64,000 nucleotides of DNA from IMGVR_UViG_3300038463_000730:1-64000, one strand, 5' to 3'; positions 11,872-41,327 are shown, counted from the stretch's first letter. The notes: generated from the sequence alone by a model not told the origin. Numbers and translations are program-made.

Positions 11872-11894
11872 GGTCGTCTCCTTTCTATTCCGGT

Positions 11895-26639: not shown

Positions 26640-26643
26640 TGGT

Positions 26644-26967: not shown

Positions 26968-26978
26968 ATAAGGTTCGG

Positions 26979-27361
26979 ATGCATCCCGAGTTCGTCATCT
27001 ATCGTCACGTCGGAGGAAAAAGTATCGTTCCGAAAGTTGAGCGGATCTTTCGTTTGCTCGGGCACCAAATCGAATGGAGTCCGTACATTCGTCATTTGCA
27101 TGTCGATGGTTACGATTTTCTTTGTAACCGGTGTTACGAGCGATTCTTTATGCCGAGTAAGAATTTCGCTCCTTTCTCGGTAGACATCGAGTATCCTCTT
27201 TATTTTGTTTGCGAATGAAATGGTCTTTCGATATCGGTGACTTCAAACTTGGGAATTGGATGTTCCAGGTCACGGATTTTGTTGGAGAGGATCTGACTTG
27301 GGATGGTCTAGCTTTTCTTCGGCCTCAGTATCTTTGCAAACGGTTTCATGTTCTTCTTTGA
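26979..27361 (+). pseudogene. family A paralogue split by a frameshift
   Basis: LLGH...CNRC ends at 27218; C-terminal ...YLCKRFHVLL-stop is in the -1 frame and ends at 27361. Confidence 0.7.
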
Positions 27362-27364
27362 CGA

Positions 27365-27805
27365 TTGCGCCGGATTTACATTTATAACCAGATCATGACT
27401 CCGGTTTTTCGCGCCTCTCAGATTGTTCTGGAGATCAACCGACATCTTCGAGTGTTTGGTCATCGGATTTCTCGTCTCGTAACCGATTCTGGAAAAGAGC
27501 TTGGAAGTCGTGGAGCACGGCGTTGGCGTCCCGGAACGGGCAGTCGCTTTGCCAATTGCGTTCATTGTCATGTTCGACTCGAAGCATTTTTGTTTCATTC
27601 CGGTTCTGGTGATGGAATTTCGAATATGTTTTGGGTTAGTAAAGTGGAGAAAGTTTATCGGCCCGGTGGATATATTACTCGATTCTTCCAGATAAAAGAA
27701 ACATCTTCCGGATTTGCTTTGGATGAACCGTATGCCAAATTACTAGAGCGACGTCAGAAGTATCCTGAGATATTGGTTTGTACCAGGATTGCTGCGTTCT
27801 TATGA
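27365..27805 (+). CDS. family A paralogue
   Basis: VFGH...CVHC...CTRIAAFL-stop. Confidence 0.8.
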   Translation: MRRIYIYNQIMTPVFRASQIVLEINRHLRVFGHRISRLVTDSGKELGSRGARRWRPGTGSRFANCVHCHVRLEAFLFHSGSGDGISNMFWVSKVEKVYRPGGYITRFFQIKETSSGFALDEPYAKLLERRQKYPEILVCTRIAAFL

Positions 27806-27966
27806 TCAGTACAATTCATGTTAGGTCGAACACATCGCATACTGGTTAAGCATCGGCCCGAGTTGGACTCAATCCATTGGAGTTTATTTGTTTTCGGAAT
27901 CAAATGTTCGATAGCGATCTGTCGAGATCTGCTTAGTGTCTTCTCCTACCGGTACCGAGGTGATGC

Positions 27967-28179
27967 ATGGCTCAAGATAGCGAAGAGGTTCTTGCGGCTC
28001 GATATCGGAGAGAAATAGACGCTTGGAAACGAATTCTGGAAGCTGGTGAGAAAACAATTGATCCGGATCGGGAACACGATTGGGAGGATATGTGTTACGG
28101 ATTCTTTCTTGCTTTAGCGCCGAATCAACAAGTCGCTGAAGAGTTGACGGTATATTGTTACGATCATAACTTACTGTGA
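27967..28179 (+). CDS. hypothetical protein
   Basis: 70 aa ORF; GAGG RBS. Confidence 0.6.
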   Translation: MAQDSEEVLAARYRREIDAWKRILEAGEKTIDPDREHDWEDMCYGFFLALAPNQQVAEELTVYCYDHNLL

Positions 28180-28198
28180 GGACCGAGGCGAAGCCAAG

Positions 28199-28483
28199 AT
28201 GAACGAATGTAAATACTGTTCTCCTACAGGTGCCGGAACGACTCGCTGCGATAATCCAAATTGTCGTGCTCCGACACTGGATGAGCTGAATCAGATGAAT
28301 GGGATCAGTCCTTATCGAAGTCCTCATGTTCCTGAGTACAAACTTCTCTCCAGCCATCACAGCATGAAAGACCTGGAGGAACATGTCAATTCTGCCTCCG
28401 GCGAAGGATTCGAGCCGCTCATGATGACCGGAACCGGTTCGGGCCACGGTGGGTACGTTTTCGTATTGATGGTTCGACGGTAA
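28199..28483 (+). CDS. Zn-ribbon plus DUF4177-like protein
   Basis: CKYC...C...C then EYKLL...LEEHVN...EGFE. Confidence 0.6.
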   Translation: MNECKYCSPTGAGTTRCDNPNCRAPTLDELNQMNGISPYRSPHVPEYKLLSSHHSMKDLEEHVNSASGEGFEPLMMTGTGSGHGGYVFVLMVRR

Positions 28484-28490
28484 CGAAGTC

Positions 28491-29108
28491 ATGATCGACG
28501 GGTTAACTTACATTCCCGGGTTCATCACGCCGGAGATCGAATCAGATCTGCTGACCGCGATCGATATGATGCCTTGGGATATGAGCTTGAAGCGTCGTAC
28601 CCAACATTATGGTTACCGTTACGATTACACTCAGAAGTCGATTGATCGATCTCAGTTTTTGGGTCCGTTTCCTTCTTCCTTTGATGATGTGGTCCGGTTA
28701 CTTAAACCGTACGGAACGTTTGATCAATGCATTATCAATGAATACATGCCTGGTCAAGGTATCGCGGCCCACGCCGATTGTATTCCGTGTTTCGGGCCAG
28801 TCATTTGTTCGGTTAGTCTCGGATCGACATGTACGATGGACTTTGCTAATTTTCGTAACGAGAAGCCTTACCGTCGAGCCGCGATCGAATCGTTGTTCCT
28901 CGATGCTCGTAGCTTGATCATTCTTGATGGTTCGGCTCGATACGATTGGACTCATGCCATTCCGGCTCGGAAGCACGACGAGATGATTGAGCGCGGTCGT
29001 CGGGTCTCGTTAACATTTCGCTCGGTCATACCCACGGTCATACCCACGGTCATACCCACGGTCATACCCACGGTCATACCCACGGTCATGCCTTCGGTAC
29101 AGAAATGA
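28491..29108 (+). CDS. alkB: AlkB-family 2OG-Fe(II) dioxygenase
   Basis: RRTQHYGYRYDY, NEYMPGQGIAAHAD (HxD), WTHAI, RVSLTFR. Confidence 0.9.
   Translation: MIDGLTYIPGFITPEIESDLLTAIDMMPWDMSLKRRTQHYGYRYDYTQKSIDRSQFLGPFPSSFDDVVRLLKPYGTFDQCIINEYMPGQGIAAHADCIPCFGPVICSVSLGSTCTMDFANFRNEKPYRRAAIESLFLDARSLIILDGSARYDWTHAIPARKHDEMIERGRRVSLTFRSVIPTVIPTVIPTVIPTVIPTVMPSVQK
29023..29090. repeat. 12-nt tandem repeat (CGGTCATACCCA)x5 encoding (VIPT)x5
   Basis: Read directly. Confidence 0.95.
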
Positions 29109-29114
29109 ACTCCG

Positions 29115-29474
29115 ATGAAATCCGATATCAAGAACCTTAAGCGCTTCCGAAGTCGGGTTAACAAAATGGCCAACCAATATGAGCTGGATAAAGCTCGCGA
29201 GTTGTTAACCATGTTCGAATGTGAAAGTTTGATTGACGTCGTATCTGCTTCATTGCCGCGATATCTTCTTCGTAACTGGAGGCTGGTCGAGTTTAAACAG
29301 CAAGAGACAGCGTACGATTCAACATCGTTTTGGAAGTTTCGTTATGGTCGTCGGAGGTTCTTTTGTCACTTAACCGTTAATTGCTACGATATTGTATCGT
29401 ACGTCAACTTCGAAGACCCGGAAAAGTACGAAGAAATCGAACGCCAGATTAAACGTTACGCGCAATACATGTAA
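29115..29474 (+). CDS. hypothetical protein
   Basis: 119 aa ORF. Confidence 0.65.
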   Translation: MKSDIKNLKRFRSRVNKMANQYELDKARELLTMFECESLIDVVSASLPRYLLRNWRLVEFKQQETAYDSTSFWKFRYGRRRFFCHLTVNCYDIVSYVNFEDPEKYEEIERQIKRYAQYM

Positions 29475-29481
29475 GCAACGT

Positions 29482-29778
29482 ATGAGTAATCAAGCTACCA
29501 AACTCGCGACCGTTCTTCTAGAACGCCTCGGCCACAAACCATCAGCTTGGACCGTGACCTCGCTCGGGTTCGATATTACGACTTGTACCGTATGCGATGC
29601 GCCGTTTCTCGTCGATAGCCGTGGTACTAAGATCATTCTCTCAACAACCGGCTTAATGAGTATTAGTGGTTGGGAGAAGACTTATACATTTAAACCAGAA
29701 GACGTTACATACTTTATTCGCCAGGTTGCTCGCCGGTTTCCTTGGGCTTTTTGCTTGAAGTTTCAGGTTATGGTATGA
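29482..29778 (+). CDS. family A paralogue
   Basis: RLGH...CTVC...CLKFQVMV-stop. Confidence 0.8.
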   Translation: MSNQATKLATVLLERLGHKPSAWTVTSLGFDITTCTVCDAPFLVDSRGTKIILSTTGLMSISGWEKTYTFKPEDVTYFIRQVARRFPWAFCLKFQVMV

Positions 29779-30152
29779 AACGCGATTCGATCAGCTTCTT
29801 TATTGAGAGGGACTCGGATCCATCTCATCAGAAATATGCCGAGCAGTTCATCCGTTTACTCGGCCATCGAACCAGTCCGTGGATCCTGGAACGCGCTCAT
29901 CCGAACTATGGTTCGTATTCCGGTATGTATCATCTTACTCGTTGCGCTCATTGTGACATGTTGTTCGACGTCAAGATCTATCATGATTCGGCCGATGTAA
30001 ATGCTGCCGATGGCTTAATGATATATTGGCGTAAGCACGAATATTCTGGCGAGAACGATGCCGATTTGGTCACTCGAATCAATAAAACGGCCAAAATGAT
30101 GCGCCAGCACCGAACCCAAGTCATCTGCCCGAGATTAACGGTATTGCTATAG
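29775..30152 (+). CDS. family A paralogue
   Basis: LLGH...CAHC...CPRLTVLL-stop. Confidence 0.8.
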   Translation: MKRDSISFFIERDSDPSHQKYAEQFIRLLGHRTSPWILERAHPNYGSYSGMYHLTRCAHCDMLFDVKIYHDSADVNAADGLMIYWRKHEYSGENDADLVTRINKTAKMMRQHRTQVICPRLTVLL

Positions 30153-30164
30153 AGTAGGTTACGC

Positions 30165-30575
30165 ATGAACATCAAGCCCGAAGCACTATTTAAGAAGTTT
30201 CTCGAACGAATGCAACACACATATTCGATTCAGAAGAAGAAACCGACATCAAAACCAAACATCCACTTTGATGATGCGGAACTTCGTTTCGAAGAGATCG
30301 TTCGTGCTCGGTGCCATACTTGTCTTCGTGAGTACCGCCTGCTACTTACGAAAGAGACCAACTATACCAAAGTAGGTAAGGTAGGTCACACGTACGAAAT
30401 CCGTGTCAACGGTAATAAACAAGACAATGTATCGTACAACCGTTTGTTGTTTGGATTCGAGGGAGAGTTCGTCGATAACGAGATCATCATCCCGGAAGAT
30501 TGGTTTACTTCGGCTTACAAGATTGCGATGGAAAAGAAGCTATCTACCTGTACTAAATTCGATGTGATGAAATGA
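30165..30575 (+). CDS. family A paralogue
   Basis: RMQH...CHTC...CTKFDVMK-stop. Confidence 0.75.
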   Translation: MNIKPEALFKKFLERMQHTYSIQKKKPTSKPNIHFDDAELRFEEIVRARCHTCLREYRLLLTKETNYTKVGKVGHTYEIRVNGNKQDNVSYNRLLFGFEGEFVDNEIIIPEDWFTSAYKIAMEKKLSTCTKFDVMK

Positions 30576-31030
30576 GAAAACCGACTCATCTTCAAGAACT
30601 TCGCGCTTGGGCTCACGAACGAGCTAGATTGATCGGGCATTCAATAACTATTCCGAACCGATATTCTTTTGAGCCCGGAAGGCATCTTGGTTATTTAAGT
30701 TCTTGCGCTCATTGTCCACAGAAGTTTGTATTGTGTTTGGAACGGCGCCAACTTCAAAAAGACATATCCTATTCCGGCAAGTTCTCGCTTGAGACCGGTC
30801 ATCTCCTGTACCTGACCGATCAATATACCGAGGTTAGGAATGTCACGGGTTACCTTCGATCGATCTTTGGGCAAGAACTAAACAAGAAACGTTTCTCCGA
30901 TCTGCCGAGCTACTTTCATATCATCGGTGTCCACTGCTATCATTTGGATCGAACCATATCGATGGATGAACCGATGAAGAAACCGAGGACGAAGAAGTTC
31001 TTGTGTCCTCGGTTGAAGACGTTTTTATGA
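30572..31030 (+). CDS. family A paralogue
   Basis: LIGH...CAHC...CPRLKTFL-stop. Confidence 0.8.
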   Translation: MRKPTHLQELRAWAHERARLIGHSITIPNRYSFEPGRHLGYLSSCAHCPQKFVLCLERRQLQKDISYSGKFSLETGHLLYLTDQYTEVRNVTGYLRSIFGQELNKKRFSDLPSYFHIIGVHCYHLDRTISMDEPMKKPRTKKFLCPRLKTFL

Positions 31031-31500
31031 AAAACTACCCTGAGTCATTTTCTCATTATCCATGGTACATGGCATTCGAATACATCATCAACATGATGCG
31101 AATTGCGTGCCATCATCGGATGCAAATAGACGATACACCGCTTGTACGCACGATCGGAACCGACCAAGCATTTCTTGCCAATTGCATTGCTTGTGAAGCA
31201 ACGTTTATTATTATGTATCGCGCTTATTCTGGTGGAGCGGCTTCCATATGGGTTATGCAAACAATGGATTACGAAACTTTACAAACCAAAACTGATGTAA
31301 ACTTGATGTCTATTAACGGAATAACCGATATACGTAACGCATTCGGCACAGATGTCGTGAATAGTCTGCCGAATCCATTAGATGGACATTGGGTTGTTCC
31401 GGTAATGGTTCTTTACCAAGATGGTCTGGTTATTACACGACGAGAGCAAGATTATACGGACCAGATCAACTGGTGTTCGAGATTCAAATCATTCTGGTAA
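31027..31500 (+). CDS. family A paralogue
   Basis: ACHH...CIAC...CSRFKSFW-stop. Confidence 0.75.
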   Translation: MKNYPESFSHYPWYMAFEYIINMMRIACHHRMQIDDTPLVRTIGTDQAFLANCIACEATFIIMYRAYSGGAASIWVMQTMDYETLQTKTDVNLMSINGITDIRNAFGTDVVNSLPNPLDGHWVVPVMVLYQDGLVITRREQDYTDQINWCSRFKSFW

Positions 31501-31589
31501 TCCGAAAACTATCTTGCATGAATTTAGTCGAGATCCATCGGAGTTATTCGTATAACCGAACTAACGTGTAAACCGCTGATAACACTCCG

Positions 31590-31880
31590 ATGTCATATTC
31601 CTACACAAATTCCGTTATACCGAGCAAGTCACGGCGTTATGCTTTGCCTTGGGAGTTGAAAAACGGTCAATATATCCGCAGACTTTTTGCCGGAGAGACC
31701 GAATTAACTCCAATTATTTTGACGTTTGATTCTTTCCGTTGTTCATGGACGAGTCGCCCCGAATCCGCCTATTACGTTGGAATGTGTACCAGTCTTGAAG
31801 GAGCCAAATCAACGGCCGAGCGGCGTTTGAAGAAAATGGGGTTCCTATTCATAAGCAAACGTTTGGTTTGTATGTTGTGA
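31590..31880 (+). CDS. family B (PW...AK...L..xG) paralogue
   Basis: YALPW...EGAKSTAERRLKKMGF...KRLVCML-stop. Confidence 0.75.
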   Translation: MSYSYTNSVIPSKSRRYALPWELKNGQYIRRLFAGETELTPIILTFDSFRCSWTSRPESAYYVGMCTSLEGAKSTAERRLKKMGFLFISKRLVCML

Positions 31881-31895
31881 TGACGTGAGGATCTG

Positions 31896-32084
31896 ATGTA
31901 CCGTTATCGCCAAATTGAAAACGTCGTTCCAACCGAACTTGAAAACTTACTGAATAAAGAAGCAAAGGATGGCTGGGAACTTGCCAGTACGTACAATATC
32001 ATGCAACGTGACCCGTGGTCTCACTACCACAATAAATTGAATGTCGTTCTGCGCCGTGATCGACGGTTAGATTCATTCGGATGA
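31896..32084 (+). CDS. DUF4177-like small protein
   Basis: YRYRQI...ELENLLNKEAKDGWELAS...VVLRR. Confidence 0.7.
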   Translation: MYRYRQIENVVPTELENLLNKEAKDGWELASTYNIMQRDPWSHYHNKLNVVLRRDRRLDSFG

Positions 32085-32404
32085 AGAACAGAGTTGCTTA
32101 TCCATGGGTAACCAATCCAATACCTTTGTTGCGCATGATTGTTATGTATCGTGACCTTTATTGCAATTGGCATGAAGAACCAGTTCATAAGTTTGCCACG
32201 ATAGCTATCTACTATGAAGAAGCGGGTACGTTCATTATCGAAGGTCCGATCGAACAATTTATTCACGGAGAAGAGAAGAATCTTTTCGGCCAATATATCC
32301 CGGAATCCGAGATGACGTGGGACGTTGGCAAAGCATACGTTGACCGATATCTCGTATTGAACGGATTTCGCCTGGTAGATCAACGAGCCGCAATCTTCGG
32401 ATGA
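32081..32404 (+). CDS. family B paralogue
   Basis: VAYPW...GKAYVDRYLVLNGF...RAAIFG-stop. Confidence 0.7.
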   Translation: MKNRVAYPWVTNPIPLLRMIVMYRDLYCNWHEEPVHKFATIAIYYEEAGTFIIEGPIEQFIHGEEKNLFGQYIPESEMTWDVGKAYVDRYLVLNGFRLVDQRAAIFG

Positions 32405-32436
32405 CGACCGGCGCTTCCTGACTTCCATCGAGTCTG

Positions 32437-33042
32437 ATGATCAAAGAAGGAACCCGAATCACAGACGATCAGCCCCGAACACCGCTCATCGGTCAGTACA
32501 AGCTTCGCCAGGATGTCGTTCGTGTCTCAAAACGAATCGTGCGTCGTCTTGGGCATCTCATGCCGAAAGGAGCATGGCTCGAAACCTTCTCCTATCCTGG
32601 CTCGAAACTAACGGCGCGGTGTCGTCATTGTTCTCGCATTTTCGTTCTCTCGGGGCGCCCCGATGTCGGGCAAGGTAAGTGGAAGGTCGCGCCACAGTAC
32701 ACGACATCCGACGAACCAGGATTCATTGCGCGCTTCGAGCTTGACCCGTGGATTATGTTTGAAGTTATTTCAAACGCGGCAGAGATCGAGACGTCAACGG
32801 CGTTTCAAAGCGGTCGCGCGGCAACTTCTTCCGAACGGATCACGGATGTTGGCCCGAGGGATTGGGAACTGAACGCTTTTCAGCGCAGTTTTCATACGCT
32901 CGTGCAATTAGCAGGCGGAACACCTCCAACGTTCGAGGACGAATCTCTTGACGAAGAGACGAAGGAAGCTCGGCTCATTGAAAAGAAGCTCAAACCAATC
33001 GATAAACGTTTTTACTGCGCGAAGGTAAAGACCTGGTTGTAG
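32437..33042 (+). CDS. family A paralogue (long insert)
   Basis: RLGH...CRHC...CAKVKTWL-stop. Confidence 0.8.
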   Translation: MIKEGTRITDDQPRTPLIGQYKLRQDVVRVSKRIVRRLGHLMPKGAWLETFSYPGSKLTARCRHCSRIFVLSGRPDVGQGKWKVAPQYTTSDEPGFIARFELDPWIMFEVISNAAEIETSTAFQSGRAATSSERITDVGPRDWELNAFQRSFHTLVQLAGGTPPTFEDESLDEETKEARLIEKKLKPIDKRFYCAKVKTWL

Positions 33043-33082
33043 TCGGAAGTCGAGAGTCCGGTTGGGGAATCGTCTACTCGGG

Positions 33083-33478
33083 ATGATCGATGACTCGAAT
33101 GAGAGTGCTTATCGCTCGTACATGTTGCTGACGCATTTGGTTCTGCGTGTCATGGGCCATCGAATCGGTCCGTTCGCAAAACTTCGGGATGGAACCAGCA
33201 CACCGGGCGAGGGGCTCGTAGTCACGGATGAAGCGAAGTGTTCCGCTTGTGGCCGTTATTTTCGAGCGACCATGACAAACCGAACGTATTTTCAGATTCG
33301 CATTTCTCACGTTCATAACAATGTCATGTATTCGCCTCGCTCGTTCTACTTCGTAGCCAGCTTTGAGCCAACCAGCCGGGAATTGCTCGATGCACCGGTC
33401 AGCCATGTTCGTCGGTTCTTAGCAGCGGAGTCAAACTACAAGGAATCTATCTGTACACGTTTTAAGGTGATGGCTTAA
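33083..33478 (+). CDS. family A paralogue
   Basis: VMGH...CSAC...CTRFKVMA-stop. Confidence 0.8.
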   Translation: MIDDSNESAYRSYMLLTHLVLRVMGHRIGPFAKLRDGTSTPGEGLVVTDEAKCSACGRYFRATMTNRTYFQIRISHVHNNVMYSPRSFYFVASFEPTSRELLDAPVSHVRRFLAAESNYKESICTRFKVMA

Positions 33479-33497
33479 AAAAGGTTCGGGCATTATT

Positions 33498-33809
33498 ATG
33501 AAAATTCTTTCCATTTTACCTTGGAACTCTTTCGGTAAGCTTAAGGCATTCAAGATTTTTCATACTCGTTCGTCGATGTACCCGACCCATACCCATTTCG
33601 CTCGGGCCGGTGTGATTCGTTCCTCTTCTTGGAAGAATAAAGTTGCCTACGTTTGCGAAGTGAAACGCTTTCGAAAGGAGAAGGTTGTTCTCTTTGGCAT
33701 CGCCTATTCGCTCAAAGCGGCGAAAGACAAAGTGGATGAGTTTCTGCGCCAGAATAACGTTCGCATCAAAACCCGTAAACAGATCGAGCGACTCCAGGTG
33801 ATGAAATGA
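33498..33809 (+). CDS. family B paralogue
   Basis: SILPW...AAKDKVDEFLRQN...ERLQVMK-stop. Confidence 0.75.
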   Translation: MKILSILPWNSFGKLKAFKIFHTRSSMYPTHTHFARAGVIRSSSWKNKVAYVCEVKRFRKEKVVLFGIAYSLKAAKDKVDEFLRQNNVRIKTRKQIERLQVMK

Positions 33810-34096
33810 ATCGTAAGACTGCTTTCCCTTGGCGTAAAGTGTTTGCTGTTTCGGAAGTCTATGCCAGGTTCGATCCGAAAGGCGTTAAGATTGCGCAGAT
33901 CATCGTTCGAAAAAGTGACGATGGTTCGTTCGCAATCTGGAATATCCTGGCGACCGAGATGATCGACGGTGATGCGATCACCGGGCGTTGCGAGACGTTG
34001 GACTACGCATTCGAATTAGTGGATGACACGTTAGAGATGCACGGCTGGACTCTTCTTTGCACGGATATGAAGTCGGAAACAGCAATCCGTTTGTAG
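33806..34096 (+). CDS. family B paralogue
   Basis: TAFPW...YAFELVDDTLEMHGW. Confidence 0.7.
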   Translation: MNRKTAFPWRKVFAVSEVYARFDPKGVKIAQIIVRKSDDGSFAIWNILATEMIDGDAITGRCETLDYAFELVDDTLEMHGWTLLCTDMKSETAIRL

Positions 34097-34097
34097 C

Positions 34098-34442
34098 ATG
34101 ATTACTCGGTATGTACTTCCTTGGACCGCCATTCCGAAGGCTCTACGAGCCCCGGATTATCGGTACTATTACTCACGAACAATCGTTTCCCCAACCATTC
34201 CGTATGGCATGGGGTTGTCTGCTGGTTCGGTTCATCTTCTTAATGGGAAATACAAAGGACAATGTGGTCCGAATGATTGGCAATGGGCCGTATGGAACTG
34301 GCAAGAGGAACCTCTTCGGCATTCAGTTGATTCATGGTCTGGAGTCGGTTGCACGGAAGAACAAGCTCGTCGTTATGTAGATAAAAAGCTACGTAAGCTT
34401 GGATTCAAATTCGTTACAAAAAAGTGTTTGGTGTTCCTATGA
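34098..34442 (+). CDS. family B paralogue
   Basis: YVLPW...QARRYVDKKLRKLGF...KKCLVFL-stop. Confidence 0.75.
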   Translation: MITRYVLPWTAIPKALRAPDYRYYYSRTIVSPTIPYGMGLSAGSVHLLNGKYKGQCGPNDWQWAVWNWQEEPLRHSVDSWSGVGCTEEQARRYVDKKLRKLGFKFVTKKCLVFL

Positions 34443-34891
34443 GCGAAGCTGCAACCAAACGCCCGGATGAAAACGACATCCTACGAATCGTACATAATAC
34501 CATTACAGGAGCTATTCGTCGGATTGGTCACCAGCTCGCCGAAAACAAATGGAAAGAAGGACCGGTCATTTACGGATATCATCACGGTCATGCGTGGTGG
34601 CAGGATTGTGCCCGTAAATGTAAATGGCGATTCGCAATCGAGAAACAGCTTGATATTGCCGGTCGCACCCGTTTCGATATACGAGCGGTCGTCGTTCATA
34701 ACGAGAATCCGTTCATGCAAGAGATCCTGGAAAGCCACTCGCTATTTGAAATCGTTCTAGGACCGGACTTGAACCTCATCGGAGATTACACAAAACAGAA
34801 CGTCATCATTCCACTAGACGAGAACGTGATGAGAACGTTTGTTCTCGGCAGTAAAGATTGTCTATGCAGTCGTTTAACAAATTTCATCTAG
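34439..34891 (+). CDS. family A paralogue
   Basis: RIGH...CARKC...CSRLTNFI-stop. Confidence 0.8.
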   Translation: MSEAATKRPDENDILRIVHNTITGAIRRIGHQLAENKWKEGPVIYGYHHGHAWWQDCARKCKWRFAIEKQLDIAGRTRFDIRAVVVHNENPFMQEILESHSLFEIVLGPDLNLIGDYTKQNVIIPLDENVMRTFVLGSKDCLCSRLTNFI

Positions 34892-35265
34892 AGTTCCCGC
34901 TCGTCACGGATGAAATCGTTGCGAAGGCGACGCTTATCCTGACCATGCTAGGACACAAAATTGATGAAACGTCATGGGAGATCGAATCATACGGCCACAC
35001 GTTTAAAGCAGCGGCTCCACGAGTGCGTTGCTTGATTCAGAACTGCACTCACGTTTTTGGATTGATGGAAATGAGGTTTCCACGAAGTGTCAAACTGATT
35101 CGATACTTTGAACTAAACAGTGATAAAATACCAGACATACTTCTACTTATTCCAGGTCCGAGCGTTTCGCTAGATCAACTTCGAGCTACGGTAAAAACGC
35201 ACCCTGACTTTAATACTAGAGAAGTAGAACAAGCTTATTGTGTTCGGTACCGGAACCTGAGATGA
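34858..35265 (+). CDS. family A paralogue
   Basis: MLGH...CLIQNC...CVRYRNLR-stop. Confidence 0.8.
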   Translation: MSMQSFNKFHLEFPLVTDEIVAKATLILTMLGHKIDETSWEIESYGHTFKAAAPRVRCLIQNCTHVFGLMEMRFPRSVKLIRYFELNSDKIPDILLLIPGPSVSLDQLRATVKTHPDFNTREVEQAYCVRYRNLR

Positions 35266-35540
35266 ACCGTGACCTGAGCAAAATGTTGTTTCCTTGGCAA
35301 CAGCTTCCACGTCATCGGCACGCCAACTACTCTGCTCGTTACGTTAGACGCGATCGTTACGGTGAAAATATCGCTTGGATTTGGTTAAGATCGGACAGGA
35401 AGGACTGGTTATGGGAAATCTCATCAACGGGCTTAACGGGTTTCGATATGGACTTGCAGGTAGCGATGACGAAAGTGAATATCTTGCTGATCTCCGCAGG
35501 GTATACGGAACTACCAAACCGACTAAAGGTTCTCCTATAA
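35262..35540 (+). CDS. family B paralogue
   Basis: MLFPW...VAMTKVNILLISAGY...NRLKVLL-stop. Confidence 0.75.
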   Translation: MNRDLSKMLFPWQQLPRHRHANYSARYVRRDRYGENIAWIWLRSDRKDWLWEISSTGLTGFDMDLQVAMTKVNILLISAGYTELPNRLKVLL

Positions 35541-35551
35541 TTCGGATCGCC

Positions 35552-35857
35552 ATGCCATGGCATCGCGACTATTGGGAGAATGGTTGGCCAGCACCGAGTC
35601 AACCGTGCAACGATAAACGAGTTCGTATGATGTCGATGCGGATGAATCCGGAACGATACATGCTCGGAACGATTGTTCAGAACCTCGGGCAGAAAGATTT
35701 CTCTTGGGAAGTTAACAGTCAGGTATTGACGGAGAATATACTAGACGAATGGAAAGGACGATGCCGTTCCGAACTCGACGCCACTTTAACGGTCGAACGT
35801 ATTCTCCGAGAGAATTGCTTCAAACTACTAGAAGAGAAGCACTTGTTACTAGGATGA
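35552..35857 (+). CDS. family B paralogue
   Basis: MPW...DATLTVERILRENCFKLL. Confidence 0.65.
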   Translation: MPWHRDYWENGWPAPSQPCNDKRVRMMSMRMNPERYMLGTIVQNLGQKDFSWEVNSQVLTENILDEWKGRCRSELDATLTVERILRENCFKLLEEKHLLLG

Positions 35858-36642
35858 AACCTGTCAGCACAAAGATGTCTCGAATCCAAGATCAGCTGAC
35901 CATTCTCAAAGAATGGAGAGCGTTCGAGTTCTTTGGCATTCGATTGATGGATAAACTTGCTCACGACATCTATCCGATGGAAGTGAAGCTTGAAGCTCGT
36001 CCAACCGACATCAATGCTTACACCGAATGTAGGCGTTGTCTCAAGAGCTTTCGCTTCCGTCTTATGCAAATGGCGAATGGTGACAAGTTCTGGCGACTGA
36101 CTGGCCGAGCCACAACTAATTCTCATCATTCATACGAACTACCTTGTTACGATCTTGACTATGATAGTCCGCAAGCCGGGATCGAGCTGTTAAGCGACAT
36201 CGATGACAACGGATTGTTCTGTTCAGAGGTTCGTGAATGTCACATCGATCGTAAAGAGTTCAAGAAGAAGCTCTATAAACTTGCGAAACTATCCTCTAAA
36301 TACTTCGAGCATTGTTTTTTGCATAAGGCTACGTTCAAACGGATCGTAGCCGGTTACATGACTCAAGGTGACATCACGTACACTCGGGCCCGAACTGCCG
36401 CGTTCGAGGGTCGATGCCGCGTTTGTAACATGACCTTCGGTATTCGTGTGGATGATCAGATTCACACATTCTTTCTTGGTGGGCCGAGCGGTAAATCGAT
36501 TCTGATTGAGAAAGCCGATGTACTAAATGTTGACGATTGGCTGGTCGATGCATCAAAACGCATAAGAAATGAAACGAACATCACCTTCAAAAACCAAGAC
36601 TATGCTCATTTCGCCTGTACTCGTCTCGAAATTCTTAAGTGA
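35854..36642 (+). CDS. family A double-domain protein
   Basis: KLAH...CRRC...LFC; then YFEH...CRVC...CTRLEILK-stop. Confidence 0.75.
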   Translation: MKPVSTKMSRIQDQLTILKEWRAFEFFGIRLMDKLAHDIYPMEVKLEARPTDINAYTECRRCLKSFRFRLMQMANGDKFWRLTGRATTNSHHSYELPCYDLDYDSPQAGIELLSDIDDNGLFCSEVRECHIDRKEFKKKLYKLAKLSSKYFEHCFLHKATFKRIVAGYMTQGDITYTRARTAAFEGRCRVCNMTFGIRVDDQIHTFFLGGPSGKSILIEKADVLNVDDWLVDASKRIRNETNITFKNQDYAHFACTRLEILK

Positions 36643-37075
36643 TCCAGATGAACCCGATTACTACAAAGCGGCTCGGATCGTTGCCAACTTAATGAAGCAT
36701 GACTTGGCTGAAAAGAATCCTTGGAAGAAACTGCAAGGGGAATACGGAACAGTCGTGGATGGCCACTGCCAATGCCTCTACCCAACGTGTCAACGGCATC
36801 TCTTTGTTTGCAAGGTGAATCTCCCGATCGATCCGACCTTCCTTAATAAACTAGGAATCATCGAGGAGAAAACAACCCACGCCTACTATCTCATTCAGCA
36901 GCATGAAGGACGGGAACAGACACTCTGCACGCTCGGCTACGGTCGCACGGATCGCCGGTATGCTAAATACCGACAGTATCATGCGTACGTATCGATCCCC
37001 AGGTTGTTAGCTGGTAAACAAATCATTCAAACTGACGATAAGTACTTGTGCGGTAGATTTAACATTCTCCGGTGA
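36569..37075 (+). CDS. family A paralogue (start uncertain)
   Basis: LMKH...CLYPTC...CGRFNILR-stop. Confidence 0.75.
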   Translation: MKRTSPSKTKTMLISPVLVSKFLSDPDEPDYYKAARIVANLMKHDLAEKNPWKKLQGEYGTVVDGHCQCLYPTCQRHLFVCKVNLPIDPTFLNKLGIIEEKTTHAYYLIQQHEGREQTLCTLGYGRTDRRYAKYRQYHAYVSIPRLLAGKQIIQTDDKYLCGRFNILR

Positions 37076-37078
37076 ATT

Positions 37079-37426
37079 ATGTCAGATTTTGACTTGGTAT
37101 TTCGAGACTCGATGTCGTTTATCAAACGATTGGGTCATCGTATCCCGCTCGGAGAATGGCGGGACATACGTGGTGGCACATTAGGATGGTGCTCGGCCTG
37201 TGAACGCGGATTCATGTTCAAACGTATTCCGGTAGAACAATTCATACTATTTGAGTGTACCGATTCGTACAATCATGGTGCATCTGCTGCGATAGCTTAT
37301 TGGTCCAGCAAATTACATTCTTTTCAAAAAGGTTACTACAAGATATTTAAAATTGGTGACCCCGTTGATTTCGTTTCTGCTACTCATACCAAATTCATGT
37401 GCTCCAGACTACGGGTAATGATGTAA
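37079..37426 (+). CDS. family A paralogue
   Basis: RLGH...CSAC...CSRLRVMM-stop. Confidence 0.8.
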   Translation: MSDFDLVFRDSMSFIKRLGHRIPLGEWRDIRGGTLGWCSACERGFMFKRIPVEQFILFECTDSYNHGASAAIAYWSSKLHSFQKGYYKIFKIGDPVDFVSATHTKFMCSRLRVMM

Positions 37427-37755
37427 TGCACCTAGAATATTTCTCTGCGTTCCTTCGTCATCTCGGTCATGAACTGGCTGACTGGAGAATGATCGAGTCC
37501 AAATATTGGAAAGAGTTCCATACCTATTGTCCGAAAGTTGGTTGTGGCAAAATGTTCAAGATCCACAACCACTCTAGTCAATGGACAATGGATCGAATCA
37601 TGGTTAATCAATACGGCCATGACCGTGAAGAGAAAGTTATGGATTTCCATGATCGTGAACTGAGCGCATGGAATGGTGAGCCGCTTAATTATCATCGGGA
37701 GAAAGCTACCATATACAAGCAACATCTGTGTTCGAAAGTGAAGGCTTTTCTATGA
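37426..37755 (+). CDS. family A paralogue
   Basis: HLGH...CPKVGC...CSKVKAFL-stop. Confidence 0.8.
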   Translation: MHLEYFSAFLRHLGHELADWRMIESKYWKEFHTYCPKVGCGKMFKIHNHSSQWTMDRIMVNQYGHDREEKVMDFHDRELSAWNGEPLNYHREKATIYKQHLCSKVKAFL

Positions 37756-38069
37756 GTTTCTATCACAACAAACGAGTTATCCTGATCACAACCAAACTAC
37801 TCCAGCATTTCGGCCATGAGCTTGACCCGGTCAACTGGCAGCCTGGGGAGGACTCGGATCTGGTCAACGCTTGCACGAATATGGAGTGTCGGAATCGGTT
37901 TACTTTGTTCACACCTTTTCCACACAACTACTCGGCCGATCGTATCTGGCGTATGATGAACATCGAATCATTCGAAGGCTTCCACTTCAATGAGAGCATG
38001 GAGTATCAGGAAGTAAAGAATCGTGTATTGCGCATTCGTAATAAGAACCTGTATTGTGGCTGTCACTAA
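37752..38069 (+). CDS. family A paralogue lacking the C-terminal tag
   Basis: HFGH...CTNMEC...LYCGCH-stop. Confidence 0.75.
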   Translation: MSFYHNKRVILITTKLLQHFGHELDPVNWQPGEDSDLVNACTNMECRNRFTLFTPFPHNYSADRIWRMMNIESFEGFHFNESMEYQEVKNRVLRIRNKNLYCGCH

Positions 38070-38398
38070 TGGCCCGTTCTTTGTACCATAGGAAAGCTGA
38101 ATCTGGCTTGCGTACCCTAGGTCATAAGATCGAGGTACGTGAGGTCATCCCGACTCTCAACGAATTGAACGCGCGAGCCGTGTTTACCGACTATGTGGTA
38201 AAACTGTGGGTATGTTTAAAATGCAAAAAAGTATTCATGCTACACAAAACGCCCAGCTCGCAGTACGTTACCAAGCACGTTGAACAATTCTACTCAACAT
38301 TCATGTTTACTGTCCTGCGTGGCGAGGTGTATGGTCAGACCTTCCTAAACAAGGTTGACAGGTATTTCATATGCGACCGACTGAAGAATCTAGCGTAG
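38069..38398 (+). CDS. family A paralogue
   Basis: TLGH...CLKC...CDRLKNLA-stop. Confidence 0.8.
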   Translation: MARSLYHRKAESGLRTLGHKIEVREVIPTLNELNARAVFTDYVVKLWVCLKCKKVFMLHKTPSSQYVTKHVEQFYSTFMFTVLRGEVYGQTFLNKVDRYFICDRLKNLA

Positions 38399-38772
38399 AA
38401 GAGTCCGGCATAAGAGAAGCTGAAATCGTCAGCTTCAATCTGGACTGGAGCATTTGCGAATCGAACGTGGCGAAGATTCTTACGAGCTGGGGTCACCAGA
38501 TCGACGAGCAATCCTGGGTCAAAAACAAAGCCGATGAAGGCCGATTAATTTGGTGCTCGAACGAATCTTGTCGAAAACTTTTCCAGGTCACTTTAATCGG
38601 TGGCACAAACATCGCCTGGAACATCGGACAGCTTATCGTGAAGGAAGATGAAGAGCATCTTTATCGACGCGGAATCATCATCTTGTTCAACGACATTTAC
38701 TACAATGTCAGCCACTTAAAACGGGGAGTTAAACCCGAATTCTTTTGTTCTCGGTACATTAACTTCAGGTGA
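38371..38772 (+). CDS. family A paralogue
   Basis: SWGH...CSNESC...CSRYINFR-stop. Confidence 0.8.
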   Translation: MRPTEESSVEESGIREAEIVSFNLDWSICESNVAKILTSWGHQIDEQSWVKNKADEGRLIWCSNESCRKLFQVTLIGGTNIAWNIGQLIVKEDEEHLYRRGIIILFNDIYYNVSHLKRGVKPEFFCSRYINFR

Positions 38773-38835
38773 CTTTCGCCATCCGCCGTAGTAAGCTGTC
38801 GGTGCTTCGGAAGAGCCGTTTAGAGCCTGGCGATA

Positions 38836-39267
38836 ATGAGACATTTTCTAAAGAGCAGAACAGTTTCTCGCGTCGAGATCCCGAATAAGGATCGTCTTCA
38901 GCTCTTTAGGATGGACTCTTTGACTAAAAACAAATCAATTGCACTCGACAGTGGTGATGATTCTTGCACCAGAATAAAAATTGCCGAACCGGAAGATACT
39001 CGGCATTGTGTCGCGCCACCGGCTCCGACAGAAAAAGAATCGGATGAAATGTTCGGGCTCGAAGCTGGATTGATTCGGCTGCCCGTCATGTCTGCGATTT
39101 CGGACCCGTACGTGCTGGAGGAACTAGTTCTATTCACACGTAGCGAGAAGCTTCATGAGATGGCGGAGGATTTAGGACTCTTTGACGAAGAGGAAGAAAA
39201 GTCCACCGTTGACAGCCACACGATCGCTCCCGGCAGGATTCGTCGGAAGCTTGATGACATTGCCTAA
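38836..39267 (+). CDS. hypothetical acidic protein
   Basis: 143 aa ORF. Confidence 0.6.
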   Translation: MRHFLKSRTVSRVEIPNKDRLQLFRMDSLTKNKSIALDSGDDSCTRIKIAEPEDTRHCVAPPAPTEKESDEMFGLEAGLIRLPVMSAISDPYVLEELVLFTRSEKLHEMAEDLGLFDEEEEKSTVDSHTIAPGRIRRKLDDIA

Positions 39268-39533
39268 TGGACGAGTGCCCTCTATGTGGGTCGTGCGTTC
39301 CGTCGCTGTGTGATTGCTCGGCAACCCTGAAACAAATTCACAACGATCTAGTCGAGATCAATCGGCGAATCGAAAGTGAACGACCTCGGAATACACCGAT
39401 CACGATCCTTCCAGTCCCGGATAAGAAAATCAAATACTCACCCGACCTCAGAACTCCTGCGGAACCAACCTCGAAACTAGCTCAGTTCTTTAGACGTATA
39501 AAGGATTGGTTTCGTGGTATATGGTCGTGGTGA
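39267..39533 (+). CDS. hypothetical protein (N-terminal CxxC...CxC)
   Basis: 88 aa ORF. Confidence 0.6.
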   Translation: MDECPLCGSCVPSLCDCSATLKQIHNDLVEINRRIESERPRNTPITILPVPDKKIKYSPDLRTPAEPTSKLAQFFRRIKDWFRGIWSW

Positions 39534-39904
39534 CATTAGCAGCAATTCAAGCGCCAATAATCAAACGAGCCGTTCGAGTCTTCCAGCACTTCGGTCATCA
39601 TTTCGATCTTCAGCGGGTCAAACTAAAACCAAACTTCCGTCCTATCTCTCGCTTTCCTGACCCGAACATCAATCTAGCTGTCGGACCGAACAAAGGACAG
39701 AAAGTCTATTGCGCAGGGTACGCTTCGGTTTGTACGGTGTGCAGCGTTAATCTAGGCATGCAAGAAAGCCCATTCGAACATGAGTGGGCTTTTTCAATTA
39801 ACGAGTTGGTACTTCGGGATTACTCAGAAGACGAGCAGCTAAACACCGAACTACACCGTAGATACCCAGGTCTGGTTTGTCCCCGTCTTAGGAATTTCTT
39901 ATGA
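39521..39904 (+). CDS. family A paralogue
   Basis: HFGH...CTVC...CPRLRNFL-stop. Confidence 0.8.
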   Translation: MVVVTLAAIQAPIIKRAVRVFQHFGHHFDLQRVKLKPNFRPISRFPDPNINLAVGPNKGQKVYCAGYASVCTVCSVNLGMQESPFEHEWAFSINELVLRDYSEDEQLNTELHRRYPGLVCPRLRNFL

Positions 39905-40284
39905 TCGTCAACACCGAGCAACAAGCCAAACTTCACAAAGTTGTCAGTGATTGTGTTACGGCTTTCGACTTCATTGACCATTCGTTCCCATTTAGACTTC
40001 TACGGCAAGCATCGATGGTAGCAGCCCACATTCCTGAGGTCAAAGAATATCCTCGAACAACTACAACACGATTCGTTGGTTATTGCCGAAACTGTTCTAT
40101 TGAAATAATGTTAACTGTCGGATCATTCCCAATGCGTACGTACACTCACTATGATTTGTTTTTCAATCGAGAACGGTCTTTCAATCTCGTTCTAGACCGC
40201 ACGTTCATTAAAGACCTGGGGTTTCGTACACACTCGAATGGTTTCACAATACCGATTTGCAAAAAGTTCGAGGCTTTCGTATGA
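39901..40284 (+). CDS. family A paralogue
   Basis: FIDH...CRNC...CKKFEAFV-stop. Confidence 0.75.
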   Translation: MIVNTEQQAKLHKVVSDCVTAFDFIDHSFPFRLLRQASMVAAHIPEVKEYPRTTTTRFVGYCRNCSIEIMLTVGSFPMRTYTHYDLFFNRERSFNLVLDRTFIKDLGFRTHSNGFTIPICKKFEAFV

Positions 40285-40619
40285 GAACGAAGATTCAGAT
40301 TGAACTGGAGACGTTAGCCCGAGCCATGAGTAAACGTTTTCTACACAAATTCTGGGGCAAAGAATACATCGGCTTAATCAAACGAGTCAAAGGGTACTGT
40401 AGTCACTGCGGCATTCAAATTCTATTGGTCAAAGGAAAGGGTGCCGAGCATTCGTTATTCCTTGGGACACGACACTTTCGCGTGGGCAATGAGCGGTTCG
40501 CTTCATCCGGAACTTATCCTAGCTTGATCGTTTCAAAAATGCTGATCATGCCATCAGATCCGATATCGAGAGAATTGCTTCTTGAGCACGGCTGTAAAAA
40601 GTTCGTAGCTTTACTATGA
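40281..40619 (+). CDS. family A paralogue
   Basis: RFLH...CSHC...CKKFVALL-stop. Confidence 0.75.
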   Translation: MRTKIQIELETLARAMSKRFLHKFWGKEYIGLIKRVKGYCSHCGIQILLVKGKGAEHSLFLGTRHFRVGNERFASSGTYPSLIVSKMLIMPSDPISRELLLEHGCKKFVALL

Positions 40620-40634
40620 CGAGAGATCCGGGTC

Positions 40635-40991: not shown

Positions 40992-40992
40992 C

Positions 40993-41319: not shown

Positions 41320-41327
41320 GATAATCT

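What the first reader, a model, noticed from the sequence alone, without database searches (positions are those of the whole stretch)
31590..35857. Second Cys-poor paralogue family (family B) interleaved in the same array
Seen: seven ORFs of 92-115 aa (31590, 32081, 33498, 33806, 34098, 35262, 35552). They start with a hydrophobic-P-W motif (LPW/YPW/FPW/MPW) and end with an amphipathic helix of the type A(K/R)xxV(D/E)xxLxxxG(F/W/Y), mostly followed by the shared tag. They lack the GH/CxxC ligands. Inference: a second scaffold independently recruited to, and amplified in, the same tag-dependent system.
Basis: partly seen in the sequence, partly recalled or inferred. Interest (0 to 1): 0.62.

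Follow-up and report, generated by a model that had tools for sequence, protein, structure and literature searches.

The report
AP2-like small protein family with shared tail
The seven small genes are a real, fast-evolving, unannotated phage protein family: each has a distant AP2-like (probably DNA-binding) fold, and most end in a short tail also found on about a tenth of this 435-kb phage's genes; what reads that tail is unknown.

Summary
All seven ORFs exist. A profile built from them finds 8 further ORFs in the same 434,688-bp virus record (E 6e-7 to 3.5e-4) and no decoys. The family has 18-19 copies in this genome. A profile search found 308 relatives (E<=1e-3), all from metagenome data plus one MAG; Pfam, PHROGs and NCBIfam have no model for it. 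An orthologous syntenic array in a related phage contig shows purifying selection (dN/dS 0.17-0.49).

An AlphaFold2 model (pLDDT 88.8) gives a five-stranded sheet, one helix and a short terminal helix. Three lines tie the C-terminal two-thirds to the AP2 DNA-binding domain:
- the profile hits true AP2-repeat proteins in register with their Pfam AP2 stretches;
- hhalign gives 94.8% probability, P 5e-8;
- AP2 structures appear among the structural matches, and an AP2 factor is the top PDB sequence hit.

Pfam's own AP2 model does not match, so this is a remote relative, not a member.

Family B is not detectably homologous to the Zn-binding family A. The C-terminal tail [KR]-hydrophobic-x-[VIA]-[MF]-L is shared (a family-A-trained matrix scores B tails at p 1e-11). 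It also sits on 25 or more other ORFs and is selected at the amino-acid level. Its partner and function are unproven, so a "tag-dependent system" remains an inference.

The parts
31590..31880 (+). Family B member 1 (96 aa). LPW at residues 19-21. Canonical tail (last six residues encoded at 31860-31877).
   Evidence: leave-one-out E 8e-4; tail scores 11.3 and 7.2
31896..32084 (+). Interposed 62-aa ORF, not family B. Weak DUF4177-like match. Ends in a tail-like R-L-x-x-F-G and overlaps the next start by ATGA.
   Evidence: PF13783, E 5.6e-5, 23.7 bits, below the 25-bit cut-off
32081..32404 (+). Family B member 2 (107 aa). YPW at residues 7-9. Marginal tail.
   Evidence: (leave-one-out E 4e-3)
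32437..33478 (+). Two interleaved family A genes (32437-33042 and 33062-33478). Zn-type H-C-C-C ligands and a C-x-[KR]-led tail.
   Evidence: orthologues in L014
33498..33809 (+). Family B member 3 (103 aa). LPW at residues 7-9. Canonical tail (33789-33806). Very basic (net charge +18).
   Evidence: E 3e-3; tail score 13.8
33806..34096 (+). Family B member 4 (96 aa). FPW at residues 7-9. No canonical tail, but its own ending is conserved in the orthologue P0008 (62% identity, dN/dS 0.17).
   Evidence: (E 8e-4)
34098..34442 (+). Family B member 5 (114 aa), the member that was modelled. LPW at residues 7-9. Five strands, helix 87-100, strand 103-105, tail helix 108-111 (tail encoded at 34422-34439).
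   Evidence: E 3e-8; pLDDT 88.8, pTM 0.82; orthologue 44% identity, dN/dS 0.27
34424..35265 (+). Two interleaved family A genes (34424-34891 and 34858-35265).
35262..35540 (+). Family B member 6 (92 aa). FPW at residues 10-12. Canonical tail (35520-35537).
   Evidence: BLAST 1e-8 to the copy at 332 kb; leave-one-out only 0.29; dN/dS 0.49; tail score 12.5
35552..35857 (+). Family B member 7 (101 aa if it starts at the M of MPW). Non-canonical tail, conserved in the orthologue. The start codon is uncertain: the orthologue has no ATG there.
   Evidence: E 2.5e-4; 49% identity, dN/dS 0.21
35749..36642 (+). Family A gene with two A modules in one 297-aa ORF. It overlaps the 3' end of member 7.
   Evidence: E 2e-147 to the family A profile

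Best explanation
**Shown.**
- The seven ORFs are true paralogues of one protein family.
- The family has 18-19 copies in this 434,688-bp virus record and at least 300 relatives elsewhere.
- It evolves fast but under purifying selection.
- It has no entry in Pfam, PHROGs or NCBIfam.

**Shown on a predicted model and by profile comparison.** Each protein is one small alpha+beta domain.
- An N-terminal strand carries the hydrophobic-P-W motif.
- A five-stranded antiparallel sheet carries an invariant Arg and a W-x-W strand.
- One helix follows (A...D..L...G-aromatic).
- The last two sheet strands plus the helix are a remote relative of the AP2 DNA-binding domain. The hallmark positions align: Arg in strand 1, Trp in strand 2, Gly in strand 3, and Ala and Asp of the RAYD-type helix.

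**Inferred.**
- The proteins are small nucleic-acid-binding modules, most likely sequence-specific DNA binders.
- They are encoded in accessory gene arrays that look early-expressed (inferred from genome position only) and have diversified by tandem duplication to act on different host or phage targets.
- Relatives in other sequences string 2-7 copies of the same domain in one chain, which is what DNA-reading modules often do.

**The tail.**
- Single-domain phage copies add 7-9 residues after the domain, [KR]-hydrophobic-x-[VIA]-[MF]-L at the free C-terminus.
- It is a separate, amino-acid-selected motif. It is dispensable for the fold, since the multi-repeat relatives lack it.
- It is shared with the unrelated Zn-binding family A and with 25 or more other small ORFs.
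- I infer that one common trans-acting partner reads it, for docking, sorting or turnover. That partner was not identified.
For: **Family is real.** (profile hits outside the training set, leave-one-out recovery, no decoy hits).

**Copies elsewhere in the genome.** 270, 332, 369-372 and 375 kb.

**Relatives.** 308 proteins at E<=1e-3 among 1.84 billion representatives. No Pfam, PHROGs or NCBIfam family.

**Real genes.** The syntenic array in L014 has 34-62% amino-acid identity, saturated dS and dN/dS 0.17-0.49.

**Fold.** pLDDT 88.8, pTM 0.82.

**AP2 link.**
- The B profile, at positions 39-78, hits the AP2 units of P0051, P0059, P0071 and P0095; for P0051, P0059 and P0071 the hits coincide with the Pfam AP2 stretch reported.
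- hhalign of 186 B domains against 20 AP2 units gives probability 94.8%, P 5.3e-8, 41 columns.
- The top PDB sequence hit of the 87-sequence profile is the AP2 factor WRI1. Both of its AP2 domains align, and B's invariant Arg falls on AP2 strand 1 (E 0.23, not significant alone).

**Charge.** Median pI is 9.1.

**Tail.**
- Matrix score >=8 at the C-terminus of 25 non-A/B ORFs, against 1.2 expected.
- The A-trained matrix on B tails gives p 1e-11.
- Synonymous codon use at positions -6 and -5 matches the genome.
- 45 of 70 external single-domain relatives keep the tail.
- The four multi-repeat relatives read in full end right after G-aromatic-x-L, and profile matches in the repeat proteins stop before the tail positions.
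Against: - Pfam's AP2 model does not match any of the seven at E<=1, nor anything in the genome at E<=10.
- The AP2 units used in hhalign were chosen because the B profile had hit them. That biases the result upward.
- Seven of the 18 paralogues are neutral or acidic (pI 4.5-6.4), which is odd for DNA binders.
- No DNA target, no expression data and no partner for the tail were found.
- AlphaFold2 models the tail as a confident short helix in both families. That fits a structural cap as well as a free motif.
Confidence: 0.6

Rival explanations
1. Family B proteins are protein-binding inhibitors or decoys, for example anti-defence or host-takeover factors. They use a generic sheet-plus-helix scaffold and do not bind nucleic acid. 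The AP2 resemblance is ancient or convergent and says nothing about function.
For: - Seven of 18 copies are neutral or acidic.
- Divergence between paralogues is extreme (about 20% identity), and they sit in accessory gene arrays.
- Pfam's AP2 model does not match.
Against: - The invariant Arg and the conserved Trp lie on sheet strands that align to AP2's DNA-contacting strands.
- Tandem 2-7-repeat architectures are typical of DNA-reading modules.
- Most copies are basic.
Confidence: 0.22
2. The tail is a C-terminal degron. Tail-bearing accessory proteins would be cleared on schedule by a Clp-type protease built on the phage's own ClpP homologues and a host unfoldase.
For: - The phage encodes two adjacent ClpP homologues (170.6 and 161.2 bits) and a third (87.4 bits).
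- The motif is tied to the free C-terminus. It is far commoner there than expected from its frequency inside proteins (25 observed against 1.2 expected at score >=8).
- It is basic then hydrophobic.
- It marks about 10% of genes, all small, in the accessory arms and never in the 120-260 kb core.
- Hydrophobic C-termini correlate with proteolytic susceptibility in bacteria (statement in PMC10862746).
Against: - No phage ClpX/ClpA-type ATPase or ClpX zinc finger was found.
- Strong E. coli ClpXP degrons end in Ala-Ala. Bulky hydrophobic tags such as LVLFL were not degraded by ClpXP or ClpAP in vitro (PMC10862746).
- The tail is modelled as an ordered helix.
- The third ClpP-like gene may simply be a prohead protease.
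Confidence: 0.15
3. The tail is an assembly element. It lets single-domain proteins of families B, A and others form homo- or hetero-oligomers, so that they functionally replace the covalent tandem repeats of the tail-less relatives.
For: - Multi-repeat relatives lack the tail and single-domain ones have it.
- A and B genes are interleaved and probably co-transcribed, since starts and stops overlap.
Against: - The homodimer prediction gave no support.
- Six residues is very short for a stable interface.
- No pairing pattern of A with B is seen in the gene order.
Confidence: 0.1
4. The shared ending is only a shadow of nucleotide signals at gene junctions (a Shine-Dalgarno site and an ATGA overlap for the next gene). 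It is not a protein motif.
For: - The third base of the last codon is A in 26 of 47 cases, against 20% genome-wide.
- CTA and TTA are enriched among final Leu codons.
- The third base of codon -4 is G in 25 of 47 cases, and GTG is enriched at -3. Together these give AGG(TG), a Shine-Dalgarno-like string about 7 nt before the overlapping ATG.
Against: - Positions -6 and -5 use synonymous codons as the genome does.
- The M/F alternation at -2 needs 2-3 base changes.
- The tail is present where the next gene does not overlap, and on a gene followed by a terminator-like hairpin.
- The same amino-acid motif is kept in 45 of 70 distant relatives.
Confidence: 0.04
5. Families A and B are one superfamily, for example circular permutants. 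The tail would then be inherited, not independently acquired.
For: - The helix ending L..lG(H/F)-x-hydrophobic is similar in both. It is N-terminal in A and C-terminal in B (hhalign 22 columns, P 0.006).
- Both models hit the same Mediator Med17 chain and 3cxj.
Against: - hhalign probability is 4-6%.
- Permuted B against A does not extend the match.
- The topologies differ.
- A has invariant H-C-C-C ligands and B has none.
Confidence: 0.05

Closest known systems
AP2/ERF DNA-binding domain (Pfam PF00847), including the bacterial and phage AP2 modules of HNH and LAGLIDADG homing endonucleases
   Same: - Antiparallel sheet packed on one C-terminal helix.
- Profile-profile match over strands 2-3 and the helix.
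- Aligned hallmark residues: Arg in strand 1, Trp in strand 2, Gly in strand 3, Ala and Asp of the RAYD-type helix.
- Occurs singly and in tandem repeats.
- Common in phages.
   Different: - Pfam's model does not match.
- Family B has two extra N-terminal strands with an almost invariant P-W.
- The helix ends in G-aromatic-x-hydrophobic.
- Phage copies carry a C-terminal tail.
- No endonuclease partner domain.
- A third of the copies are acidic.
WGR domain (Pfam PF05406; PARP1/PARP3 WGR)
   Same: - Five-stranded sheet plus one helix, followed by a G-aromatic.
- Also a nucleic-acid-contacting module.
   Different: - No Pfam WGR hit on the seven or on 59 multi-repeat relatives.
- The family B consensus has no W-G-R signature.
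- rmsd is 4.2-4.7 A.
- A profile-profile test against WGR could not be run, because no WGR sequences were obtainable with the tools.
CasPR anti-CRISPR proteins of Bacillota phages (CapR zinc module plus AP2 module; bioRxiv 10.64898/2026.02.23.707548)
   Same: - Phage-encoded AP2-type DNA binders that have diversified to silence different target genes.
- A Cys-rich zinc module and an AP2 module work together. Here a zinc family (A) and an AP2-like family (B) are interleaved in one array.
   Different: - CasPRs carry both modules in one chain and match Pfam AP2.
- No sequence relationship to A or B was tested or claimed.
- This is a functional analogy only.
Family A of the same array (alpha-beta protein with H-C-C-C ligands)
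   Same: - Same array, same size class, same C-terminal tail.
- The tail is modelled as a short terminal helix in both.
   Different: - No detectable homology outside the tail.
- Family A starts with a long helix and has invariant His and three Cys.
- The word search found family A only in this genome and one close relative (low sensitivity).
Extreme-C-terminal short motifs: ssrA-like ClpX degrons, bacterial clamp-binding motifs (QL[SD]LF / QLxLxL), encapsulin cargo-loading peptides
   Same: - Position-specific at the free C-terminus.
- Short and hydrophobic.
- Portable between unrelated folds.
   Different: - It does not end in Ala-Ala (PMC10862746).
- Position -6 is K or R in 44 of 47 cases, not Gln (the clamp-motif consensus is from my own knowledge).
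- No clamp gene was found in the phage.
- No receptor is known.

Membership tests
AP2 domain (PF00847) | Match to the curated Pfam model above the gathering score (33.3 bits) | tested here: not met
   No AP2 hit on the seven at E<=1. No hit in a six-frame search of the whole genome at E<=10.
AP2 domain (PF00847) | Three-stranded antiparallel sheet packed against a following alpha helix | tested here: met
AP2 domain (PF00847) | Hallmark residues of the YRG element (Arg in strand 1, Trp in strand 2) and of the RAYD element (Ala..Asp in the helix) | tested here: inconclusive
   hhalign aligns W, G, A and D (probability 94.8%, P 5e-8, 41 columns). However, the AP2 set was pre-selected by the B profile. 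The invariant Arg aligns to AP2 strand 1 only in a non-significant HMMER alignment to WRI1 (E 0.23).
AP2 domain (PF00847) | Sequence-specific binding of double-stranded DNA through the sheet | not testable with these tools
   Needs EMSA, SELEX or a complex structure.
WGR domain (PF05406) | Pfam model match and the W-G-R signature | tested here: not met
Family A of this array | Invariant His plus three Cys (G-H ... C-x-x-C ... C-x-[KR]) | tested here: not met
   Family B has no conserved Cys or His, whereas family A has H22, C42, C45 and C85 invariant. hhalign probability is 4-6%.
Tail-bearing proteins of this phage ([KR]-hydrophobic-x-[VIA]-[MF]-L at the C-terminus) | Tail score above the background of other C-termini, with a matrix trained on another family | tested here: met
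   16 of 19 B copies lie at or above the 95th percentile, p 1e-11. Among the seven in the window, 31590, 33498, 34098 and 35262 score positive, 32081 is marginal, and 33806 and 35552 fail.
ssrA-like ClpXP degron | Terminal Ala-Ala preceded by Leu | tested here: not met
   The last two residues are mostly M/F/L then L. The degron rule is from PMC10862746.
Bacterial sliding-clamp-binding motif | Gln at the first position of QL[SD]LF / QLxLxL | tested here: not met
   Position -6 is K or R in 44 of 47 cases. The consensus is from my own knowledge. No DnaN-type clamp was found in the phage.

The most novel reading that the evidence does not exclude
The tail is a phage-specific protein address label. 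It would be a six-residue signal at the free C-terminus, carried by about 10% of the genes of a 435-kb phage on at least three unrelated folds. One dedicated receptor would read it to sort, dock or destroy a whole class of accessory proteins, for example through the phage's own ClpP pair. Family B would then be the most widespread cargo of a previously undescribed phage proteome-management system.
Probability: 0.25. Interest if true: 0.8.

Novelty: new variant of a known kind. Interest (0 to 1): 0.58.

Why it matters
**Dark matter gets a handle.** Huge phages carry hundreds of small genes of unknown function. This work shows that one large block of them is a coherent family:
- it has at least 300 members in public metagenome data;
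- no database has a model for it;
- it has a confident fold and a testable link to the AP2 DNA-binding domain.

That gives a concrete first hypothesis: diversified DNA-binding regulators or silencers.

**A portable tail.** The same short C-terminal motif sits on unrelated folds and on a tenth of the genome. If one partner reads it, that partner would be a new way for a phage to organise its own proteome. It would also be an experimental handle: tag a reporter and follow where it goes.

Tried and rejected
**Searches that found nothing or could not run.**
- PHROGs and NCBIfam scans of the 18 copies: only three single-member PHROG hits of no known function, and no NCBIfam family.
- Foldseek against the PDB and BFVD: no match at E<=0.001.
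- ESM Atlas by shape: only unnamed small, mostly viral clusters. By features: scores <=0.78, uninformative.
- tblastn of three family members against 50,697 GenBank phage records: no match. Megablast of the array: no match.
- The search for related loci with the family alignment failed because no conserved stretch was available.
- Single proteins or a 2-sequence alignment in viral, metagenome and genome collections found nothing.
- The genome search 'relatives' and 'handles' are not available for this virus record or for the MAG locus. An unbiased WGR or AP2 sequence set therefore could not be fetched.

**Hypotheses tested.**
- Circular permutation between families A and B was rejected.
- The homodimer prediction for the 34098 protein gave no verdict (score 0.01 against a mark of 0.42). 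It is no evidence either way.
- The word search with family A found only this genome and L014, which is too insensitive to draw a range from.
- Promoter and terminator scans of 24-43.5 kb were at or below shuffle expectation.
- Looking for a phage-encoded reader of C-termini: no PDZ, no S41 protease above cut-off, no ClpX-type ATPase and no clamp. Only ClpP homologues were found.
- Pfam scan of ten other tail-bearing proteins: nothing.

**Conditions of the work.** No genetic code other than table 11 was used.

Full report
**Setting.**
- The window is the first 64 kb of a single 434,688-bp contig with 48% GC.
- The tools class the contig as an IMG/VR virus record ('provirus', CheckV completeness 100%).
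- It encodes a DnaE-type polymerase, and most of its genes have no known family.
- From about 25 kb to 42 kb, the + strand carries an almost gap-free run of small genes whose stops and starts often overlap.

**The observation.**
- All have a hydrophobic-P-W motif within the first 21 residues. Only 0.75% of the other ORFs of the genome do.
- All end their domain with the helix pattern A...(V/A)D..L...G-aromatic.
- Pairwise BLAST links are weak, but profile tests are clear.
  - Leave-one-out profiles recover six of the seven at E 3e-8 to 4e-3 among 2,431 ORFs.
  - The seventh (35262) is tied in by a 1e-8 BLAST hit to a copy at 332 kb.
- A profile of the seven finds eight ORFs it was not trained on, at E 6e-7 to 3.5e-4. 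It finds no reversed or shuffled decoy at E<=10.
- Iteration converges on 18-19 copies. Seven are in the window, three at 270 kb, one at 332 kb, seven at 369-372 kb and one at 375 kb.
The family is real.

**They are genes.** A 3.9-kb contig from an unrelated sequencing run (L014) carries the same gene order: A, A, A, B, B, A, A, B, B.
- The orthologues are 34-62% identical.
- Synonymous sites are saturated (dS 1.4 or more).
- dN/dS is 0.17-0.49 for the four B pairs.
- Even the two non-canonical endings (33806 and 35552) are kept in the orthologues.
- A second contig (L015) is syntenic with the 372-378 kb region.

**Relatives elsewhere.**
- The word-index search found only the genome's own proteins and two orthologues.
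- I then ran the exhaustive profile search, because the novelty claim rests on it. It returned 308 proteins at E<=1e-3 and 21 at E<=1e-10.
- Among the 150 listed there are two architectures.
  - About 70 external single-domain proteins of 78-133 aa. P-W lies near the start in 61, and the same C-terminal tail is present in 45.
  - Proteins with 2-7 tandem copies of the domain. Each copy starts with G-P-W and ends at G-aromatic-x-L, with no tail. One is a 1,298-aa protein of a Polyangiales MAG that sits among genes of unknown function next to a phage-family gene.
- Fifty-nine multi-repeat relatives and the 18 paralogues have no meaningful Pfam, PHROGs or NCBIfam match.
- Three representatives have no tblastn hit in 50,697 GenBank phage records.
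- The family is thus widespread but so far seen only in uncultivated sequence. None of the family libraries scanned (Pfam, PHROGs, NCBIfam) has a model for it.

**Fold.** With only the 18 paralogues as alignment, AlphaFold2 gives a confident model of the 34098 protein (pLDDT 88.8, pTM 0.82).
- The order of elements is: short N-terminal strand with P-W, four long antiparallel strands, helix 87-100, short strand 103-105, then a four-residue helix in the tail.
- Foldseek finds nothing significant in the PDB or BFVD.

**The AP2 link from sequence.**
- Four of the library hits are true AP2-repeat proteins by Pfam. Two also carry a homing-endonuclease-associated domain (LAGLIDADG in P0095; a weak NUMOD1 hit in P0071).
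- The B profile hits each of their repeats with positions 39-78. For three of the four proteins these hits coincide with the Pfam AP2 stretch reported.
- hhalign of 186 B domains against the 20 AP2 units gives probability 94.8%, P 5.3e-8, over 41 columns. These cover AP2 strands 2-3 and the helix, with W, G, A and D aligned.
- The caveat is that those AP2 units were selected by the B profile.
- As an unbiased check, I searched an 87-sequence profile against all PDB sequences. The top hit was the AP2 factor WRI1, with both AP2 domains aligned and B's invariant Arg on AP2 strand 1. At E 0.23 this is not significant alone.
- Pfam's own AP2 model sees nothing in the seven or in the genome.
- My reading is that family B is a remote AP2-superfamily domain with an added N-terminal P-W strand pair. 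It is not a member of PF00847.
- WGR remains a fold-level alternative that I could not test by sequence.

**Family A and the tail.** Family A has 28 copies, 21 of them in the window.
- It has invariant His and three Cys. The last Cys sits just before the tail.
- Its model has a different topology: long helix, six strands, two short helices. It has no clear structural match.
- hhalign between A and B aligns only the tail, or one helix ending in G-(H/F), at 4-6% probability. A permutation test adds nothing. The two are separate scaffolds.
- The tail is shared. A matrix trained on A alone puts 16 of 19 B tails in the top 5% of C-termini (p 1e-11).
- The tail is not confined to A and B.
  - 25 other ORFs score 8 or more where 1.2 are expected.
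  - About 67 of 658 crude genes carry it. All are small. All lie in the 20-60 kb and 260-420 kb arms, apart from a few at 80-120 kb, and none lies in the 120-260 kb core.
  - Ten of these other proteins have no Pfam family.
- Codon analysis separates two layers.
  - Positions -6 and -5 use synonymous codons as the genome does. That points to amino-acid selection.
  - The last codon is NNA in 26 of 47 cases, from ATGA overlap.
  - Codons -4/-3 tend to spell RGG(TG), a Shine-Dalgarno-like site for the next gene.
- The tail also occurs where there is no overlap, and before a terminator-like hairpin.
- It is kept in distant relatives. On another phage contig (L017) it occurs with at least 8 B-like genes, with a further tail-bearing family, and without family A.

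**What the tail does.** This is unknown.
- It is dispensable for the fold, because the repeat proteins lack it. It is nevertheless modelled as an ordered short helix.
- I looked for a phage-encoded reader of C-termini. I found no PDZ, no S41 protease above cut-off, no ClpX/ClpA-type ATPase and no clamp.
- I did find two adjacent ClpP homologues and a third. This keeps a degron reading alive.
- However, the motif does not resemble the Ala-Ala degrons that dominate in E. coli, and bulky hydrophobic tags were not ClpXP or ClpAP substrates there (PMC10862746).
- A homodimer prediction gave no verdict.

**Most likely mechanism.** Family B proteins are small AP2-like nucleic-acid-binding modules.
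- They have been multiplied by tandem duplication and diversified.
- A functional analogy is the phage AP2-plus-zinc CasPR silencers.
- Their tail is a portable, extreme-C-terminal motif read by a common partner.
- Shown: the family, its spread, purifying selection, the separateness from A, and the statistical reality and amino-acid nature of the tail.
- Inferred: AP2 homology (about 0.75), DNA binding (about 0.5), a trans-acting reader of the tail (about 0.5), and a Clp degron (about 0.15).

**Verdict.** This is a new, unannotated variant within a known superfamily, carrying an unexplained shared tail that deserves an experiment.

Noticed in passing
Whole genome G000:C1; in the window e.g. 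30165-30575, 39901-40284, 40257-40619, 43432-44043, 46775-47308, 47311-47733: The C-terminal tail [KR]-hydrophobic-x-[VIA]-[MF]-L also ends 25 or more ORFs that belong to neither family A nor family B (1.2 expected). About 67 of 658 crude genes carry it. They cluster at 20-60 kb and 260-420 kb, and none lies at 120-260 kb.
   Followed up: partly
G000:C1:256758-257966 and 330385-330786 (outside the window; loci L022-L024): Two adjacent ClpP homologues (170.6 and 161.2 bits; one match spans a TGA) and a third ClpP-like gene (87.4 bits). No ClpX/ClpA-type ATPase was found.
   Followed up: partly
window 26070-41929 and 59970-60347: Family A has invariant His and three Cys (a likely Zn site), and the last Cys opens the tail. 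There are 28 copies in the genome. One ORF (35749-36642) holds two A modules. The model has pLDDT 84 and no clear structural match.
   Followed up: partly
window 28491-29108 (3' end, about 29030-29105): The 2OG-Fe(II) oxygenase gene ends in a run of V-I-P-T repeats, a 12-nt tandem repeat inside the coding sequence.
   Followed up: no
window about 24000: GC drops from about 55% (1-24 kb, mostly - strand ORFs) to about 46-48% (24-64 kb, mostly + strand small genes).
   Followed up: no
window, gene junctions of the array, e.g. 33470-33500 and 41595-41610: Many genes are joined by ATGA overlaps. An AGG(TGAT)-like Shine-Dalgarno string is embedded in codons -4 to -2 of the upstream gene, about 7 nt before the overlapping ATG.
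   Followed up: partly
P0010 (L020:1074-4970), P0017, P0018, P0021, P0024: Tail-less relatives string 2-7 copies of the P-W domain behind a conserved N-terminal A-L...P-x-L segment. One is in a high-GC (67%) Polyangiales MAG contig that looks phage-like.
   Followed up: partly
L017:3301-7576 and 8278-9480: A different phage contig (72.7 kb, 41% GC, with a Kyano_Gp96 gene) has arrays of 84-93-aa genes. These include a second tail-bearing family that starts M-K-L-Y-Y instead of P-W. An IS605-type TnpB gene sits inside the array.
   Followed up: no
window 5149-5979, 11188-11967, 44195-45256, 58405-59451: The few recognisable genes are an HNH endonuclease, a calcineurin-like phosphoesterase, a histidine-kinase-type ATPase domain protein and an IMP dehydrogenase/GMP reductase family protein.
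   Followed up: no
window 31896-32084: A 62-aa ORF wedged between two B genes resembles DUF4177 (just below Pfam's cut-off). It ends in a tail-like R-L-x-x-F-G.
   Followed up: no
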